Shown piece after piece: positions 28,095 through 38,073 of a DNA stretch of 64,000 bases (within the stretch, counting starts at the first letter, position 1; each line of letters opens with the position of its first letter). The notes under the pieces are model-generated. The model was given only the letters and a program-made list of their open reading frames with translations, was not told the origin of the DNA and made no database searches. The translations under genes were made by a program, and so were the position numbers. The stretch is from positions 186,001 through 250,000 of IMG/VR virus record IMGVR_UViG_3300028558_000016; one strand, given 5' to 3'.

Positions 28095-28540
28095 AAAAAG
28101 TAAATGACGGAAACTTAGAACTGTTGCATTCGGCCTTAACACATTTCGTTGGAGAACCGATAACTCAAATGAGCAAGTTCGCAGATGACAGTTTATTGTT
28201 TCAGACGCACAGCGGAATTACTGGATTTGTAGAGCCAAACAATACTGGCAACATGGAAATATCGATAGGAGAAGACATTGTATATGAGATAGAAAAGAAT
28301 TTATACGACCTTCTCGAACTCGACAAAAAGGAAATAGGATTGATTGATTTTTACAACCATCTGAAAATGGTTGATTGGACAGAGTTCAAAACCAAATCAA
28401 AAGATTTTTTTGACATAGTAAAAATATCGACGGAAAACATTATTTTAAATTATAATCTTCCATTAGTTGGTGACACCACGATAAACTCAACACAGGTTCA
28501 CTACACAAATGACCAGAAGATTAAGATCAATCTTAACTAA
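28091..28540 (+). CDS. Hypothetical protein (149 aa)
   Basis: ATG 28091 overlaps the upstream stop (ATGA). Confidence 0.65.
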   Translation: MKKVNDGNLELLHSALTHFVGEPITQMSKFADDSLLFQTHSGITGFVEPNNTGNMEISIGEDIVYEIEKNLYDLLELDKKEIGLIDFYNHLKMVDWTEFKTKSKDFFDIVKISTENIILNYNLPLVGDTTINSTQVHYTNDQKIKINLN

Positions 28541-28541
28541 T

Positions 28542-30527
28542 ATGGCAGGAATTCAACATCTAACGGAAATATTCAAAAAGAAGGGGAAAGACTTCACTCA
28601 ATCTCTATTTGATAAGTTTGTAACAATCAACGAGAAGCTTGATGCAAGTGCATTTGGCATTGAGAAGAATTCTTCTACCAAGAAGTTGGAATTCTTTAAA
28701 AGGAATACTGAGACGCCTATTTCATTAATAGACAGAACTCTAATGAAGCTTTACGAAAAGCCAATTCATTACTTCGAGGCGTTTGATCAAGAGGTTCTCG
28801 ACAAGATACCTTCGAGATGGAGATTTGGAATGGAATATTTTGCCAACGACCATCCACAAGAAATTTCTTACGACAGACTTCCAAAGAACGGTCTCGTGCT
28901 TTCTTACATTCACGTTAAAAATTCAAATGGCAAACTTGTTAGAACCATTCAGGATAAAACTGAACTTGACCAATGGGCTGACTTGTTAGGAATAGAAAGA
29001 AGTCCAATCATATTTCAAGGAAACTTAAACGACGATCAGAAGATTCAGATAATGGATTTTCTCGATACTCCATTTGGAAAACTCGTAGACAAATTCAAGA
29101 CTGACTCATTCGTAAAATTCATCATATCGGTTTTAAATCCAAAATTGAAGAAGACCACTCTTAACGATGATTTGAACAAGAACATCGAAGGAATTGTTTT
29201 CAGGTTTGGAGACGAAGACGATAAGGAAGTAATTCTCGCAAAGATGGTTGACCCTGTGTTTGAGCTTGTTTCAAAGACCAAGGCTGAGACGAAGAACGAT
29301 GATGAGCCAAACGATATTTTCCAATTGACCGTCATTGACATGATGAATTTCATCGACAGTCTTAATTTCAAAAAGTTCCAACCTAAAGGAAAAGATCTCG
29401 AGTCAAGATATTTAAACTTCATTTCAAACGCGTTCAACGATTTCGTTGATAGGTTTGGTGACAAATACAAAGACCTTAACTTCAATGAACCTGAGTTCAT
29501 GAAGAAAAAGAATTTTGACATCAATCTTGATTTCATTAAGAATGATACAACAATCGATTTAATAAACGACAACGAGGCATATAAAAAGTTATTCAAGATA
29601 TTCTTGGCAAGCTTCAGAAAGAAAAAGAAAAAGCCAAGCGGACTATTCACAACTGAAGTCATTAAACAATTTAATGGAACTGTAGACAAGATCCATGATC
29701 ATCTTGCGCAAGGACTTGCCGTTAGCGAATCTGAAATTCCAACATTTGGAGAATTCAGATTACAAAAAGGTGGATACATGGAAGATGCAGAGTCTGACGG
29801 AGGCGTGGACGATTTTGTTGAGTTTGGTGGTAAAGTAATGGATGAAGACAAGGACGATCCAAATCCTCCACAAGAAAATCCAGAGCCAAAAGCAGCTGGA
29901 GATACTAAAGATGGAAAAGAAGAAAAGAAGAAAGAGATAATAAAAGAAAAGGGCGATAAGAAAGTAAACATCATTGTTGGAAGGTTTCAACCATTCCACA
30001 ACGGTCATCTTTCCATGGCAAAAGATTTGTATGACGTTAACAAATGTCCTACTGTCATTGTCGTTGTTCACCCAGGCCACAACAAGAGCGGACAAAGTCC
30101 ATTCACAATATCAACCATTAAAACAATGATGAGCAACCTGTCAAAGGACAGCGATGGAATCATTAAGGATTATTGCATCATAGGAAGAGGTTTCATTTAT
30201 GACGTGATAAACAAATTGAGAGAACTCAATTACGAACCTGTGTTATGGGGAGCTGGCGAAGACAGAATAAACGATTACAAGAAACAGCTCGAACTTAATT
30301 TCAAGAGAGACAATGAACTTAAGCTTGGAGATAATTTCCAGCTCGTCAAGACCGATAGATATGGAACTGGTACAGAAGTAAGAAAAGCTATATCAGACGA
30401 TAAGTTCGGTGAGTTCAAAGCACTCGTTCCTAAAACAGTTCAAGGAGTTTATACACTTCTCAGAAACGACATCGAGAATGCTAAGAGAGAAGCAGAAGAA
30501 GCAAAACAATTGAAGGCAACCCAGTAA
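28542..30527 (+). CDS. Fusion: RNA-ligase-like (KxDG-type) domain + HIGH-family cytidylyltransferase-like domain
   Basis: TINEKLDAS, IEGIVF and LAKMVD ligase-like motifs; IVGRFQPFHNGH and GAGEDR in the C-terminal domain. Confidence 0.65.
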   Translation: MAGIQHLTEIFKKKGKDFTQSLFDKFVTINEKLDASAFGIEKNSSTKKLEFFKRNTETPISLIDRTLMKLYEKPIHYFEAFDQEVLDKIPSRWRFGMEYFANDHPQEISYDRLPKNGLVLSYIHVKNSNGKLVRTIQDKTELDQWADLLGIERSPIIFQGNLNDDQKIQIMDFLDTPFGKLVDKFKTDSFVKFIISVLNPKLKKTTLNDDLNKNIEGIVFRFGDEDDKEVILAKMVDPVFELVSKTKAETKNDDEPNDIFQLTVIDMMNFIDSLNFKKFQPKGKDLESRYLNFISNAFNDFVDRFGDKYKDLNFNEPEFMKKKNFDINLDFIKNDTTIDLINDNEAYKKLFKIFLASFRKKKKKPSGLFTTEVIKQFNGTVDKIHDHLAQGLAVSESEIPTFGEFRLQKGGYMEDAESDGGVDDFVEFGGKVMDEDKDDPNPPQENPEPKAAGDTKDGKEEKKKEIIKEKGDKKVNIIVGRFQPFHNGHLSMAKDLYDVNKCPTVIVVVHPGHNKSGQSPFTISTIKTMMSNLSKDSDGIIKDYCIIGRGFIYDVINKLRELNYEPVLWGAGEDRINDYKKQLELNFKRDNELKLGDNFQLVKTDRYGTGTEVRKAISDDKFGEFKALVPKTVQGVYTLLRNDIENAKREAEEAKQLKATQ

Positions 30528-35816: not shown

Positions 35817-36235
35817 AGAGATACAGCGATTTCGTTAACGTCAACGAAAAAGTCGAACAATACGATTTTGAATTCCACACAGTAGTGGTTGCAAAGAACA
35901 TTGATTTCGATAATGAGCCTGTGGACAATTCTAAGGAACAATACATTGAAAAAGGAGATTTAACCATCCATTGGATAATGGATTTCGATAATAGAAAATA
36001 CGGAATCAATAGTATGGCGCCTGTGATCAAAAAGATCTCAGGATTTTATACTTTGGTCACTCCACAAGAACAAGGCAGAGATATTGAAGATGAAGTGGAA
36101 ATTCTAATGGATGAAAAATCTGATTGGAAATTCGAGAATGATTTTCAAAGCGAATTCAAATTCGGTTACTCAATTGTTCCAGGAAGCATAGAGATAGATT
36201 TCAAAGACAAGACAATCAAAATACTTTATTATTGA
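35807..36235 (+). CDS. CTS-leader protein MGIKRYSDFVNVNE
   Basis: ATG 35807; leader variant. Confidence 0.65.
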   Translation: MGIKRYSDFVNVNEKVEQYDFEFHTVVVAKNIDFDNEPVDNSKEQYIEKGDLTIHWIMDFDNRKYGINSMAPVIKKISGFYTLVTPQEQGRDIEDEVEILMDEKSDWKFENDFQSEFKFGYSIVPGSIEIDFKDKTIKILYY

Positions 36236-37194
36236 AGCATTTCCATTGCAAGTCTCGCACCAGGTATGTGAGATGTCATTGCCATGAATGCGTACAGTGC
36301 TAAAGCAAGAGTAAAGTATTGCAACACTGCCAATAATATTTGACGCAAAGTCATTATTGGTTTTTCCACCGGCTTTTCCGGTTTCCTTAAATTCGTTTTT
36401 GTTTCAGTTAGATATTTTGCTAATTCAGCAGGAATTGGAACATTTTTATCCGTATAATCTTTTTCTATCGATGCAATGTGATTCAATATTGAATAGTATT
36501 CGTTATTGAGTATCTCATCATATTTGTTTTTTCTCTTCAACAGCCAAAATTCGAGCAACAATTCTATGGTTGATAGAATGACAACGAGAATAAAAATCCA
36601 AATGTGCGCATACACTGCGAGAAATATTGCACCCACAATTCCGAGGCACATGAAGATCAATCCAACCCAAGAGTGAATAGAGAATGCAATTGATTTCATT
36701 ATACGACCACCATCAAGAGGATTTATTGGAAGAAGGTTAAAAAGATTTATCATTGCCATCCAGCTTGCTCCAGCAGCATACATTGGATTTTCCGTGACAT
36801 AGAATATAATCATCATTCCAAGCGCACAGGCAAATCCAAACACAGGTCCCATTATGGCAACAAACACTTCGTCATTCCTTGTTTTAAAGTCTTCTGACGC
36901 AACAGCCGCTCCACCCACAAATGGAATGAAATAGATTCCCTTGGTTTTTATGCCAACACGTTTCATGGCCCAAATATGACCATACTCATGGATTAAAAGT
37001 TGTACCATTAATATAAGAGAGAACTTCCATGAATACATGTAACTGTATGCGGCAAAAGATATTCCAGCCAATGCAAGCTTGGTCATCTTTGCTGATATTG
37101 AAGTCACCTTTGTTATTACTTTAAGAGATAAGATAGCGATATTCGTCATCTTACTACCAAACGATTTTGGTTTTTCTGTTGTCATTTCTGCCAT
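36229..37194 (-). CDS. Site-2 (M50 family) intramembrane zinc protease
   Basis: HEYGH, FIPFVGG, AIMGP, NLLPINPLDGGR; start MAEMTTEK at 37194. Confidence 0.9.
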   Translation of the reverse strand: MAEMTTEKPKSFGSKMTNIAILSLKVITKVTSISAKMTKLALAGISFAAYSYMYSWKFSLILMVQLLIHEYGHIWAMKRVGIKTKGIYFIPFVGGAAVASEDFKTRNDEVFVAIMGPVFGFACALGMMIIFYVTENPMYAAGASWMAMINLFNLLPINPLDGGRIMKSIAFSIHSWVGLIFMCLGIVGAIFLAVYAHIWIFILVVILSTIELLLEFWLLKRKNKYDEILNNEYYSILNHIASIEKDYTDKNVPIPAELAKYLTETKTNLRKPEKPVEKPIMTLRQILLAVLQYFTLALALYAFMAMTSHIPGARLAMEMLQ

Positions 37195-37198
37195 GCTA

Positions 37199-37206
37199 CA
37201 AATATA
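37199..37206 (-). promoter_or_regulatory. Bacteroidota sigma-ABfr -7 element TATATTTG
   Basis: Exact TAnnTTTG, 4 nt upstream of the M50 ATG (near-leaderless). Confidence 0.55.
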
Positions 37207-37296
37207 CTTAAAACTTTTAATATCTAACGAATACAACTATTGAGAATTTTTGTAGATTTGTTTGAGTATATAGATACTGATAGTTCTTTGATTTAT

Positions 37297-37696
37297 GGGA
37301 CCGAACGGTTTTGACAGTAATCCCTTAGTGGGTAAGCACGTCGTGCCTTGTATGTGTAGCACGTTAAAGCAAACATTCACAATTTTGTAAACGGCAACGT
37401 AATTACAAACGAAGTTGGCTCAAAAGCTGACGTATTAGCAGTTTTAAAAACAGTTAAGGCTAAGCCTTCTGTTGCTCAAGTTGAAGAACTTGAGATTGCT
37501 TAATACCCTACGGGTTCACCGCAAACTCTTCAAACCTGAGAAAAGCATAAGACGCTAAGGTACAATCCGCGTGAATGCAAAGTTGATCTCGAACTCATCG
37601 AGGTTTAGTTTGAGGAATTATAAAAATTCCATCTAAACGTGTAGAAAATCTATTATTGTTTTTATTTGGACCCGGGTTCGAATCCCGGCGGTTCCA
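37297..37696 (+). ncRNA. ssrA: tmRNA
   Basis: Acceptor stem GGGACCG/CGGUUCC with G3-U wobble; GUUUUGAC D-region; T-arm CCGGG-UUCGAAU-CCCGG; discriminator A; internal tag ORF. Confidence 0.92.
37393..37503 (+). CDS. tmRNA tag frame GNVITNEVGSKADVLAVLKTVKAKPSVAQVEELEIA*
   Basis: UAAAC directly before a GGC resume codon; 36 codons then TAA. Confidence 0.7.
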   Translation, partial: GNVITNEVGSKADVLAVLKTVKAKPSVAQVEELEIA

Positions 37697-37699
37697 CTG

Positions 37700-38010
37700 A
37701 AGGTGAATCATATTGGTTTACCTATTGAGTGCCTGTTACGTGACTTGAGAATTAATAGTTGCGTGGTGTAAGAAAACAGGATAAATGATAAATTCATGCT
37801 TACCGTAGACTGGATGTTGAGTGGTTTACGCAACTATCAACCAGTCGAACACACATGAGTGACCTCGTTCGAAAACATTCAGCTCAATTGAATTTCGCCG
37901 TTAGTGTTTGTCCATTCGTAAAATGGACTGGTGGATCAAGGTAACAACCTAACATGCCCAAGTTTGTCCAAACTTTAAATGGACTGGTGGAGGTGTATGC
38001 AAACGCCCTG
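37700..38010 (+). ncRNA. Unidentified structured non-coding RNA candidate
   Basis: No long ORF; several complementary segments whose pairings cross; two copies of a 30-nt hairpin unit. Confidence 0.55.
37906..37991 (+). repeat. Two copies of GTTTGTCCA-N7-AATGGACTGGTGGA
   Basis: 37906-37935 and 37962-37991, 56-nt period, GTCCA/TGGAC stem conserved. Confidence 0.85.
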
Positions 38011-38012
38011 TG

Positions 38013-38044
38013 GAAAATGGAACTTCGGTTCCATTTTCTGTTTT
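38013..38044 (+). terminator. Rho-independent terminator with UUCG loop
   Basis: gaaaatggaac-ttcg-gttccattttc followed by tgtttt. Confidence 0.8.
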
Positions 38045-38073
38045 GAAACATATCATTAATCCTTTAATATAAA
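38045..38073 (+). promoter_or_regulatory. Putative early/middle promoter GAAACA-N17-TATAAA
   Basis: Motif shared with 21459 and 49929; ends 4 nt before ATG 38078. Confidence 0.5.

What the first reader, a model, noticed from the sequence alone, without database searches (positions are those of the whole stretch)
37700..37890. Unidentified multi-pseudoknot RNA directly downstream of tmRNA
Seen: complementary pairs 37701-37709/37715-37723, 37724-37729/37883-37888, 37732-37737/37775-37780, 37755-37764/37828-37837 (10 bp), 37768-37772/37799-37803, 37808-37813/37841-37846 and 37847-37850/37867-37870. Several of these cross one another, so they imply nested pseudoknots, in a genome that is otherwise almost gap-free. 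I see no tRNA, SRP or RNase P signature. Inference: a novel ribozyme or structural ncRNA co-transcribed with tmRNA, perhaps processing its 3' end.
Basis: partly seen in the sequence, partly recalled or inferred. Interest (0 to 1): 0.76.

Follow-up and report, generated by a model that had tools for sequence, protein, structure and literature searches.

The report
Conserved structured RNA beside phage tmRNA
Just after the tmRNA gene of a 482-kb phage lies a roughly 165-base RNA element whose core sequence and stems are kept in several related phages and which matches no known RNA family; it is probably real, but it is not the multi-pseudoknot ribozyme first proposed, and its function is unknown.

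Summary
The window comes from a 482-kb phage. Rfam finds a tmRNA at 37297-37699 (+). Short helices are at chance frequency, though, and only the 10-bp one is unusual (3 of 500 shuffles).

Ten syntenic relatives settle what is conserved.
- **Core:** a 164-nt core (37725-37888) recurs in three other lineages (L138, L141, L142). A 5' half survives in L151.
- **Conserved blocks:** a 16-nt 5' block and a 17-nt 3' block plus the adjacent P1 strand (about 23 nt) are nearly invariant.
- **Shared stems:** P1, P2 and P3 correspond to reader helices 2 and 3. P4 changes sequence completely but keeps pairing, so its changes are compensatory.
- **Reader helix 1 (P0):** a separate hairpin, seen only where the core abuts the tmRNA.
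- **Reader helices 4 and 6:** specific to this lineage. Helix 4 also competes with the conserved P3.
- **Reader helices 5 and 7:** not conserved.

So the element is a nested three- or four-way junction, and the pseudoknots are unsupported. No Rfam family matches, and no conserved HDV-like fold is present.

In L142 about 1.1 kb, including a broken homing-endonuclease gene, separates the tmRNA from the core. The closest relative (L137) and others have lost the core. It is therefore dispensable for tmRNA maturation. Best reading: an accessory structured ncRNA carried in the tmRNA transcription unit, function unknown.

The parts
37297..37699 (+). tmRNA gene. The acceptor 3' strand ends at C37695 and the discriminator is A37696. 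CCA is not encoded (A-C-U-G follows). The tag reading frame is 37393-37503.
   Evidence: Rfam RF00023, 101 bits, full length. Tag translated. ARAGORN misses it.
37701..37723 (+). P0: a 9-bp hairpin directly after the tmRNA (reader helix 1). It is not part of the conserved core.
   Evidence: Present in WIN, L138 and L141. The X25 reads change 37705, 37706 and 37708, and all three changes keep pairing. In L142 it is absent, and a remnant of an endonuclease gene's 3' end and other ORFs lie upstream of the core.
37725..37888 (+). Conserved core element. P1 closes a junction that carries the P2-P3 arm and the P4 arm. L138, L141 and L142 have an extra small hairpin.
   Evidence: Covariance model R1, built from L138 and L141, finds the window copy at 75 bits (E 3e-13) and L142 at 54 bits (E 5e-9). 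Block parsing.
37725..37741 (+). The 5' strands of P1 (37725-29), P2 (37731-36) and P3 (37737-41). This is the near-invariant 16-nt block UUGAGUGCCUGUUACG.
   Evidence: Identical in WIN, L138 and L142, with one change each in L141 and L151.
37742..37760 (+). Variable apical part of the P3 arm. In the window it extends P3 to a 9-bp hairpin.
   Evidence: MFE fold. Each relative has its own unrelated hairpin at this place.
37761..37781 (+). P3 3' strand (37761-65), the conserved purine-rich bulge GU..GAAA (37766-75) and the P2 3' strand (37776-81).
   Evidence: P2 pair 2 is C-G in four copies and G-U in L151. P2 pair 5 is G-C or G-U.
37782..37793 (+). Conserved joining strand UAAAUGAUAAAU.
   Evidence: Near-invariant in WIN, L138, L141 and L142.
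37793..37859 (+). P4 arm. The stem is 37793-98/37854-59. The loop strands are CUUAC (37799-803) and GAACACA (37847-53). A cap hairpin specific to this lineage (37808-13/37841-46, reader helix 6) carries in its loop the 3' arm of the 10-bp helix.
   Evidence: The stem sequence differs in every lineage but pairing is kept: UUCAUG/CAUGAG, UCGCAA/UUGCGA, UUGCAA/UUGCAA and UCAG/CUGA. The register was set by hand, anchored on the invariant flanks.
37866..37887 (+). Near-invariant 3' block CGUUCGAA(A/U)ACAUUCAG (37866-82), which contains a T-loop-like GUUCGAA. It is followed by the P1 3' strand CUCAA (37883-87).
   Evidence: 22 of 23 positions are identical between the window and L138, L141 and L142.
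37906..37991 (+). Two copies of a 30-nt hairpin motif (37906-35 and 37962-91), of the form GUUU-stem-loop-stem-UGGUGGA. It is a separate conserved module.
   Evidence: Direct repeat D1. Unique to this locus in the genome. Present in all nine relatives whose sequence reaches it, including those without the core, and its stems covary.
38013..38046 (+). Terminator-like hairpin with an 11-bp perfect stem and a UUCG loop, followed by a U-run. It is the likely end of the tmRNA transcription unit.
   Evidence: Inverted repeat I6. GGAACUUCGGUUCC is conserved in the relatives. The consensus scan did not list it.
36229..37236 (-). Divergent neighbour gene, Peptidase_M50 family. It was used to fetch the syntenic relatives.
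   Evidence: PF02163 on all homologues. Synteny.

Best explanation
Window 37725-37888 is a genuine, conserved, folded non-coding RNA domain on the tmRNA strand. It is a nested three-way junction, four-way in some relatives. P1 closes it. One arm is P2-P3 with a purine-rich bulge. The other is the P4 hairpin. Near-invariant joining strands link them.

It lies between the tmRNA and a shared terminator, so it is most likely made as part of the tmRNA primary transcript. I infer the following steps. The tmRNA gene lacks CCA, so an endonucleolytic cut after the discriminator is needed, followed by CCA addition, and the phage has a CCA-adding-type enzyme. That same cut would free the trailer as a separate RNA, bounded by the P0 hairpin at the 5' end and the terminator hairpin at the 3' end. 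The folded core would then act on its own as an accessory RNA. Its invariant junction strands would be a recognition surface for a protein, a small ligand or another RNA.

The core is not needed to make tmRNA.

Shown: conservation, the strand, the nested stems and dispensability. Inferred: co-transcription, release by processing and a binding function.
For: - **A family exists.** Model R1, built only from L138 and L141, recovers the window copy (75 bits, E 3e-13) and an independent copy in L142 (54 bits, E 5e-9). There is one copy per genome.
- **Selection on sequence.** The 16-nt 5' block and the roughly 23-nt 3' stretch are 95-100% identical between lineages. Their tmRNAs are only 75% identical and their neighbouring M50 genes 64-69% identical.
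- **Selection on structure.** The P4 stem is rewritten in each lineage with pairing kept, giving both-sided changes in 4-5 pairs. P2 has C-G, G-U and G-C variants. Each relative has its own hairpin on top of P3.
- **Strand.** G-U pairs in P0, P2 and P3 only work on the + strand.
- **A second biome.** Freshwater reads (run X25) cover 37713-37857 at 95% identity, against about 89% for the tmRNA 3' part. Their changes in P0 keep pairing.
- **One transcription unit is plausible.** No ORF lies between the tmRNA and a conserved terminator-like hairpin.
- **Maturation context.** CCA is not encoded. The genome has a CCA-adding-type enzyme and SmpB.
- **No known family.**
Against: - Only four full copies are available, and two of them are close relatives.
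- P1 and P3 are invariant, so they are untested by covariation.
- The P4 register was set by hand because MAFFT and the covariance model misalign it.
- Folding energy of the core is not better than shuffles (z = -0.86 for WIN and -0.51 for L142).
- No transcript data exist. The one RNA run laid on the stretch covers only tmRNA pieces of a relative.
- Frequent loss shows that the benefit is conditional at best: L137, L153, L146 and L002 lack it and L151 has half of it.
- No partner protein, ligand or target was identified. RNA duplex searches against the tmRNA gave nothing conserved.
Confidence: 0.5

Rival explanations
1. It is a self-cleaving ribozyme that cuts the precursor to form or trim the tmRNA 3' end. 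It would be analogous to the HDV-like theta ribozymes that sit directly after tRNA genes in gut phages.
For: - The position directly 3' of a CCA-less tmRNA in WIN, L138 and L141.
- The pattern of invariant junction nucleotides with variable stems is typical of small ribozymes.
- A precedent exists: theta ribozymes are postulated to process tRNA 3' trailers (PMC10879173).
Against: - No hit at E up to 10 to any Rfam ribozyme family in two copies.
- A loose HDV-like descriptor gives only non-homologous hits at chance level, with 21 of 50 shuffles also hitting.
- The conserved helices are nested, not a double pseudoknot.
- In L142 the core is about 1.1 kb from the tmRNA, and P0 is missing there.
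- Relatives without the core keep intact tmRNA genes.
Confidence: 0.07
2. It is a tRNA-derived or tRNA-mimicking RNA. Its modules follow cloverleaf order: a closing stem, an arm with GG, a 5-bp stem with a CU-starting loop, a variable hairpin, and a T-loop-like GUUCGAA before the closing strand. It could act as a decoy or a platform for tRNA- or tmRNA-binding factors.
For: - The order of modules and the invariant octamer GUUCGAA(U/A), which equals the tmRNA's own T-loop sequence.
- The L142 P4 loop has 7 nt and begins with CU.
- It lies in a stable-RNA operon of a phage with 55 tRNAs.
Against: - ARAGORN finds nothing in any copy at default settings, and relaxed settings give only poor, inconsistent cloverleaves elsewhere.
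- The Rfam tRNA, Y-RNA-like and tmRNA models do not hit it.
- No T-stem can be drawn around the T-loop-like octamer.
- The genome has no Ro/TROVE protein.
Confidence: 0.12
3. It is the relic or passenger of mobile DNA at a homing hotspot, for example a degenerate ORF-less intron-like element linked to the GIY-YIG endonuclease found at the same site in relatives. It would have no function for the phage.
For: - Relatives L145, L151, L152 and L142 carry a SegE-like GIY-YIG ORF between the tmRNA and the core.
- L137 and L153 keep only stumps of that cassette.
- Presence and absence are patchy, even between the sister genomes WIN and L137.
Against: - There is no Rfam group I or group II match.
- The helix order is nested and lacks a P3/P7-type pseudoknot.
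- The only U-G pair in P0 that could mark a 5' splice site is C-G in the X25 relative.
- The tmRNA is complete without any splicing.
- Blocks of about 100% identity alternate with unalignable stems. That pattern points to long-term purifying selection, not recent transfer or decay.
- There is a single copy per genome.
Confidence: 0.1
4. It is a cis-regulatory leader, either a riboswitch or a tRNA/tmRNA-sensing attenuator. It would work with the downstream UGGUGGA hairpins and the terminator to control read-through into the next genes.
For: - A junction with invariant strands resembles an aptamer.
- It is followed by two hairpins, each ending in UGGUGGA (the complement of a UCCACCA acceptor end), and then a terminator.
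- The sequences of the hairpin stems and the terminator resemble each other, which would allow alternative pairings (I2).
Against: - The hairpins and terminator are conserved in relatives that lack the core (L137, L153, L146, L002).
- The downstream gene differs between core-bearing genomes: a 213-aa ORF in WIN and an 88-aa ORF in L138 and L141.
- The P1 3' strand has no conserved alternative partner.
- There is no T-box or riboswitch hit.
Confidence: 0.08
5. It is a non-functional spacer, and the listed pairs are chance complementarity in AT-rich DNA.
For: - The count of short helices and the folding energy of the core are at chance level.
- The element is lost in several relatives.
Against: - The 16-nt and roughly 23-nt near-invariant blocks occur in lineages whose neighbouring genes are about 64-69% identical.
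- The P4 changes are compensatory.
- The covariance model recovers an independent copy at E 5e-9.
Confidence: 0.08

Closest known systems
Theta (minimal HDV-like) ribozymes next to phage tRNA genes (Kienbeck et al. 2024, PMC10879173)
   Same: A structured RNA placed directly 3' of a tRNA-type gene in a tailed phage, in the 3' trailer of a stable-RNA precursor.
   Different: Theta ribozymes are short and have the nested double-pseudoknot HDV fold that begins at the cleavage site. Here the conserved helices are nested, no conserved HDV-like fold is found, and the core can sit 1.1 kb from the tmRNA.
Stable RNAs and sRNAs carried in tRNA operons, namely phage T4 RNAs C and D (species 1 and 2) and the E. 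coli 3'ETS-leuZ spacer RNA. These are recalled from my own knowledge and were not checked here.
   Same: Extra RNAs co-transcribed with tRNA-type genes and freed by the same processing that matures the tRNA. Some have unknown function.
   Different: No sequence or structural relation was tested. Release of this element as a discrete RNA is inferred, not shown.
Group I introns in tmRNA or tRNA genes and phage introns with GIY-YIG endonucleases
   Same: A structured RNA with variable peripheral stems at a site where relatives carry a GIY-YIG endonuclease gene.
   Different: The tmRNA is uninterrupted. There is no Rfam group I hit. No P3-P7 pseudoknot or guanosine-site helix can be drawn. The candidate splice-site U-G pair is not conserved.
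T-box leaders
   Same: The downstream hairpins carry UGGUGGA, the complement of an uncharged UCCACCA acceptor end. This recalls the UGGN-NCCA contact, and a terminator follows.
   Different: There is no T-box hit, no specifier or Stem I features, and the UGGUGGA hairpins occur without the core.

Membership tests
tmRNA (RF00023) | Full-length match to the covariance model, with the tRNA-like domain and a tag reading frame. | tested here: met
   This applies to 37297-37699 only: 101 bits against a gathering score of 47, with a 36-codon tag. The finding (37700-37890) lies outside the match.
HDV-like / theta ribozyme | A nested double pseudoknot (P1, P1.1, P2, P3, with or without P4) that starts at the cleavage site directly after the tRNA-type gene. 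| tested here: not met
   The descriptor search gives only non-homologous hits at chance level, with 21 of 50 shuffles also hitting. No Rfam HDV-type hit. The first 23 nt after the tmRNA form a simple local hairpin.
Other known self-cleaving ribozymes (hammerhead, twister, twister-sister, pistol, hatchet, hairpin, glmS, VS) | A match to the family model, with its conserved core nucleotides. | tested here: not met
   No hit at E up to 10 in the window copy or the L138 copy. A short likeness of the P4 loop strands to hairpin-ribozyme loop B was seen by eye. No loop-A or G+1 site could be placed.
Self-cleaving ribozyme (any class) | Site-specific self-scission. | not testable with these tools
   This needs in vitro transcription or end-mapping of transcripts.
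Group I intron | P1 with a U-G pair at the 5' splice site, a P3-P7 pseudoknotted core, a terminal G, and exons that join into a functional gene. | tested here: not met
   No RF00028 hit. The conserved helices are nested. The U-G pair in P0 is C-G in the X25 relative. The tmRNA is complete without splicing.
tRNA / tRNA-like (including Y-RNA-like) | A cloverleaf with a T-arm and D-arm, or a match to the tRNA or YrlA model. For Y RNA, also a Ro protein partner. | tested here: not met
   ARAGORN gives 0 at default settings, and relaxed calls are poor and inconsistent. No Rfam hit. No TROVE protein. Only a T-loop-like octamer is present.
T-box / riboswitch leader | A match to the family model, and an expression platform that competes with the aptamer's closing stem. 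| tested here: not met
   No Rfam hit. No conserved alternative pairing for the P1 3' strand. The downstream gene is not conserved.
Spacer-embedded stable RNA of a tRNA-type operon | Co-transcription with the tRNA-type gene and release as a discrete RNA. | not testable with these tools
   The layout fits: there is no ORF, and there is a shared terminator. No RNA reads cover the element.
New RNA family (this element) | Recurrence in independent lineages with conserved sequence blocks and compensatory changes in at least one stem. | tested here: met
   There are four full copies and one half copy. P4 is compensatory in 4-5 pairs and P2 is partly so. The sample is small and the P4 register was set by hand.

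The most novel reading that the evidence does not exclude
The core is a new class of functional RNA tied to the phage's own trans-translation kit (tmRNA, SmpB and a CCA-adding enzyme). It could be a new self-cleaving ribozyme, or a ligand- or protein-binding RNA that, together with the UGGUGGA hairpins, senses or handles the acceptor end of tmRNA or tRNA-Ala.
Probability: 0.12. Interest if true: 0.8.

Novelty: new variant of a known kind. Interest (0 to 1): 0.45.

Why it matters
Huge phages are known to carry tmRNA and SmpB (PMC7162821), but nothing is known about how these phage tmRNAs are made or what travels with them. This locus shows that the tmRNA sits in a small operon of conserved RNA modules: a trailer hairpin, a junction-type core, two UGGUGGA hairpins and a terminator. 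The operon is also a hotspot for a homing endonuclease.

The core is a clean candidate for a new RNA family, with strongly constrained junction nucleotides. If it binds a factor or cleaves itself, it would add a new player to phage control of ribosome rescue or stable-RNA processing. If it does neither, it is one more orphan structured RNA. That is useful for annotation but not surprising.

Tried and rejected
- **GenBank phages:** blastn of the locus against GenBank phages gave no match.
- **DNA-pattern scans:**
  - The tmRNA 3'-end 14-mer in viral contigs gave random hits only.
  - The tag-region pattern gave one chance hit inside a coding region.
  - The metagenome scan with the T-arm and acceptor pattern returned the window's own contig plus unrelated tRNAs.
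  - The element's 3' block in viral contigs gave 0 hits.
  - The same block in bacterial genomes gave 4 hits with unrelated flanks, about what chance predicts.
  - The 5' block with the P3 strand in viral contigs gave 0 hits.
- **An abandoned early reading:** comparison with L002 and L137 first suggested a 196-nt insertion. I dropped this once L142 and L151 showed the core downstream of an endonuclease gene.
- **Group I intron mapping by hand:** rejected (see the membership test).
- **Likeness by eye to hairpin-ribozyme loop B, 5S rRNA, the SRP Alu domain and 4.5S RNA:** short k-mer resemblances only, none backed by Rfam.
- **Pairing of the conserved blocks with the tmRNA:** weak and not conserved.
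- **Tool alignments:** RNAalifold and MAFFT on the four cores recover P1-P3 but misalign P4, and the covariance-model alignment also misaligns P4. Pair counts were therefore done by script on hand-anchored blocks.
- **More distant IMG/VR relatives (L157, L158):** neither has an adjacent tmRNA or the element.
- **Last contig look-up (L155):** it had too little flank.
- **Relaxed ARAGORN:** its tRNA-like calls near 37973-38049 are poor cloverleaves.
- **The genome search 'relatives':** not available for a virus record.

Full report
**Setting**

The window is bases 186001-250000 of a 482,156-bp virus record with 36.8% G+C. Rfam finds one RNA gene in it, a full-length tmRNA at 37297-37699 on the + strand (101 bits against a gathering score of 47). 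ARAGORN does not see this tmRNA.

- The acceptor 3' strand ends at C37695 and the discriminator is A37696. The next bases are C-U-G, so CCA is not encoded.
- The tag frame 37393-37503 codes for 36 residues ending in EELEIA.
- The genome also has SmpB, a CCA-adding-type nucleotidyltransferase and 55 tRNA genes. Huge phages are known to carry tmRNA and SmpB (PMC7162821).
- No plausible ORF lies between 37700 and 38077.
- The stretch ends in an 11-bp perfect hairpin with a UUCG loop and a U-run at 38013-38046 (I6).

**Checking the observation**

Their number is not remarkable.
- The stretch has 19 perfect Watson-Crick helices of 5 bp or more. Dinucleotide shuffles give 15.1 +/- 3.5.
- Only the 10-bp helix 37755-64/37828-37 is rare, reached in 3 of 500 shuffles.
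- The MFE z-score is -2.24 for 37700-37890. It falls to -0.86 once the first hairpin is left out.

A single sequence therefore gives weak support, and the case has to rest on relatives.

**Finding relatives**

Direct DNA searches found little.
- One IMG/VR phage (L002, 373 kb) has a related tmRNA followed at once by a hairpin motif. In the window that motif lies at 37906-35 and again at 37962-91.
- Reads from a freshwater run (X25) belong to a close relative. They cover 37713-37857 at 95% identity, with 7 differences in 145 bases. They cover the tmRNA 3' part and P0 at about 89%.

The neighbouring divergent gene (36229-37236, Peptidase_M50) has many homologues. Looking up their contigs gave ten syntenic loci, each with a tmRNA next to the protease gene.

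**What is conserved**

- In L138 and L141 the tmRNA is followed by the same kind of element as in the window.
- A covariance model built from those two alone (R1) finds the window copy at 75 bits (E 3e-13).
- The same model finds an unexpected further copy in L142 at 54 bits (E 5e-9).
- It also gives a weak hit in L151, which on inspection is the 5' half only.
- The own genome has one copy.

Parsing the copies into blocks gives a common core, 37725-37888 in the window:
- P1 is UUGAG/CUCAA.
- P2 is GCCUGU/RCAGG.
- P3 is UACG/CGUG, topped by a hairpin that differs in every lineage.
- A bulge reads GU..GAAA.
- A joining strand reads UAAAUGAUAAAU.
- P4 is a hairpin.
- L138, L141 and L142 have a further small hairpin.
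- The 3' block is CGUUCGAA(U/A)ACAUUCAG, which runs into the P1 3' strand.

The 16-nt 5' block and the roughly 23-nt 3' stretch are 95-100% identical across lineages. The tmRNAs of those lineages are 75-93% identical, and their protease genes 64-69% identical at the DNA level.

**Evidence for structure**

- The P4 stem has a different sequence in each lineage and still pairs: UUCAUG/CAUGAG, UCGCAA/UUGCGA, UUGCAA/UUGCAA and UCAG/CUGA. That is a both-sided change in four to five pairs.
- P2 has one pair that is C-G in four copies and G-U in L151. It also has one-sided G-C to G-U changes.
- P1 and the four inner pairs of P3 never vary, so they are neither supported nor contradicted by covariation.
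- G-U pairs place the RNA on the + strand.
- A caveat applies to P4. MAFFT, RNAalifold and the covariance-model alignment all misplace P4 because of a 42-nt insertion in the window's loop. I set the register by hand from the invariant flanks.

- **Helix 1 (P0, 37701-23):** a hairpin just after the tmRNA. It is kept in L138 and L141. In the X25 reads three changes (G-U to A-U, A-U to G-U, U-G to C-G) all preserve it. It is absent in L142, so it is a separate trailer hairpin and not part of the core.
- **Helices 2 and 3:** these are P1 and P2.
- **Helix 6:** a cap on the P4 loop that only the window's lineage has.
- **Helix 4 (the 10-bp helix):** it joins the loop of that cap to the top of the P3 arm. 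Four of its bases are the conserved P3 3' strand, so it competes with P3, and the MFE fold prefers P3. It may be a lineage-specific tertiary contact, an alternative fold, or a by-product of the insertion that created the cap.
- **Helices 5 and 7 (5 bp and 4 bp):** they have no counterpart in the other copies.

The conserved architecture is therefore nested, and the multi-pseudoknot picture is not supported.

**Relation to the tmRNA**

- In L145, L151, L152 and L142 a SegE-like GIY-YIG ORF follows the tmRNA. The Pfam hits are weak and below the curated cut-off, but the motif is visible.
- In L151 the core remnant lies directly downstream of that ORF. In L142 the core lies about 1.1 kb from the tmRNA, after the endonuclease gene remnants and two small ORFs.
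- L137 is the sister of the window's phage by protease tree and tmRNA identity. It lacks the core and keeps only a stump of the endonuclease leader hairpin.
- L153 keeps stumps of both. L146 and L002 have neither.

The core is therefore old within this phage group, repeatedly lost, and not required for an intact tmRNA gene. That argues against a necessary role in tmRNA 3' processing. The site is a hotspot for mobile DNA.

**What it is not**

- Permissive Rfam scans (E up to 10) of the window copy and the L138 copy give only noise.
- A loose HDV-like descriptor gives only hits that are neither conserved nor above chance. This tests the closest published analogue, the theta ribozymes next to phage tRNAs (PMC10879173).
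- A group I reading fails on helix order and on the splice-site pair.
- ARAGORN finds no tRNA-like fold at default settings, and relaxed settings give poor calls.
- The genome has no Ro protein.
- Pairing of the conserved strands with the tmRNA is weak and not conserved.

**Most likely mechanism**

The layout is promoter region, tmRNA, P0, core, two hairpins and terminator, with no ORF in between. This suggests one primary transcript (inferred).

Because CCA is not encoded, the tmRNA needs an endonucleolytic cut after the discriminator and CCA addition. That cut would free the trailer as a separate RNA capped by P0 and the terminator hairpin (inferred). The invariant joining strands of the core, including a T-loop-like GUUCGAA and a purine-rich bulge, look like a recognition or tertiary-contact surface. 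I therefore favour a stand-alone accessory RNA that binds a protein, ligand or RNA.

My estimates are as follows.
- About 0.8 that it is a real structured RNA.
- About 0.5 for the whole account.
- For the rivals:
  - a self-cleaving ribozyme, 0.07
  - a tRNA-derived mimic, 0.12
  - a mobile-element relic, 0.10
  - a cis-regulatory leader, 0.08
  - a functionless spacer, 0.08

**Novelty and score**

The element matches no described family, so it is a candidate new RNA family. Only four full copies and no expression data support it. The general situation, an extra structured RNA riding in a stable-RNA operon of a phage, has precedents. I rate it a new variant of a known kind, with interest 0.45.

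Noticed in passing
window 37906-37935 and 37962-37991: Two copies of a 30-nt motif of the form GUUU-stem-loop-stem-UGGUGGA. It is conserved downstream of the tmRNA in all nine relatives whose sequence reaches it, including those without the core. The stems covary, for example GUCCAUU/AAUGGAC, GUUCAUU/AAUGAAC and GUCCUUU/AAAGGAC. UGGUGGA is the complement of UCCACCA, the 3' end of mature tmRNA and of tRNA-Ala-type acceptors. The motif is unique to this locus in the genome.
   Followed up: partly
window 37297-37699: ARAGORN fails to call this tmRNA, which Rfam scores at 101 bits. Its tag is unusually long at 36 codons and ends in EELEIA, while relatives end in EELELAA. CCA is not encoded. Surveys of huge phages that rely on ARAGORN may undercount such tmRNAs.
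   Followed up: partly
L151:1314-1919(-), L145:665-1303(-), L152:199-783(-), L142:4021-4476(+): A SegE-like GIY-YIG homing-endonuclease ORF sits directly after the tmRNA in several relatives. A hairpin that covers its ribosome-binding site precedes it. In L142 the gene is broken and partly inverted. L137 and L153 keep only stumps. The tmRNA 3' flank is a homing hotspot.
   Followed up: partly
genome G000:C1 358020-358092, 368276-368349, 374278-374351: Three tRNA genes with anticodon CUA (amber-reading) are among the 55 tRNAs. This could mean stop-codon reassignment or suppression late in infection.
   Followed up: no
genome G000:C1 127890-128306 and 307388-307756: The phage encodes its own SmpB (177 bits) and a CCA-adding-type nucleotidyltransferase (116 bits). 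It therefore carries a full trans-translation pair and the enzyme needed to finish its CCA-less tmRNA.
   Followed up: partly
window 37255-37296: The sequence just upstream of the tmRNA 5' end (..CUGAUAGUUCUUUGAUUUAU) is strongly conserved in relatives, with a TATATA box about 25 nt upstream. It is a possible promoter plus a short leader. GUGAAUCA in the P0 5' strand could also pair with UGAUUUAU in this leader.
   Followed up: no
window 28509-30527: A 672-aa ORF has weak RNA-ligase (N-terminal) and cytidylyltransferase-like (C-terminal) Pfam hits. It is a possible RNA-repair enzyme 7 kb upstream of the tmRNA.
   Followed up: no
L144:1-108(-): In another relative the tmRNA is followed by a different, unrelated sequence before the contig ends. 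This suggests a further alternative occupant of the same site.
   Followed up: no
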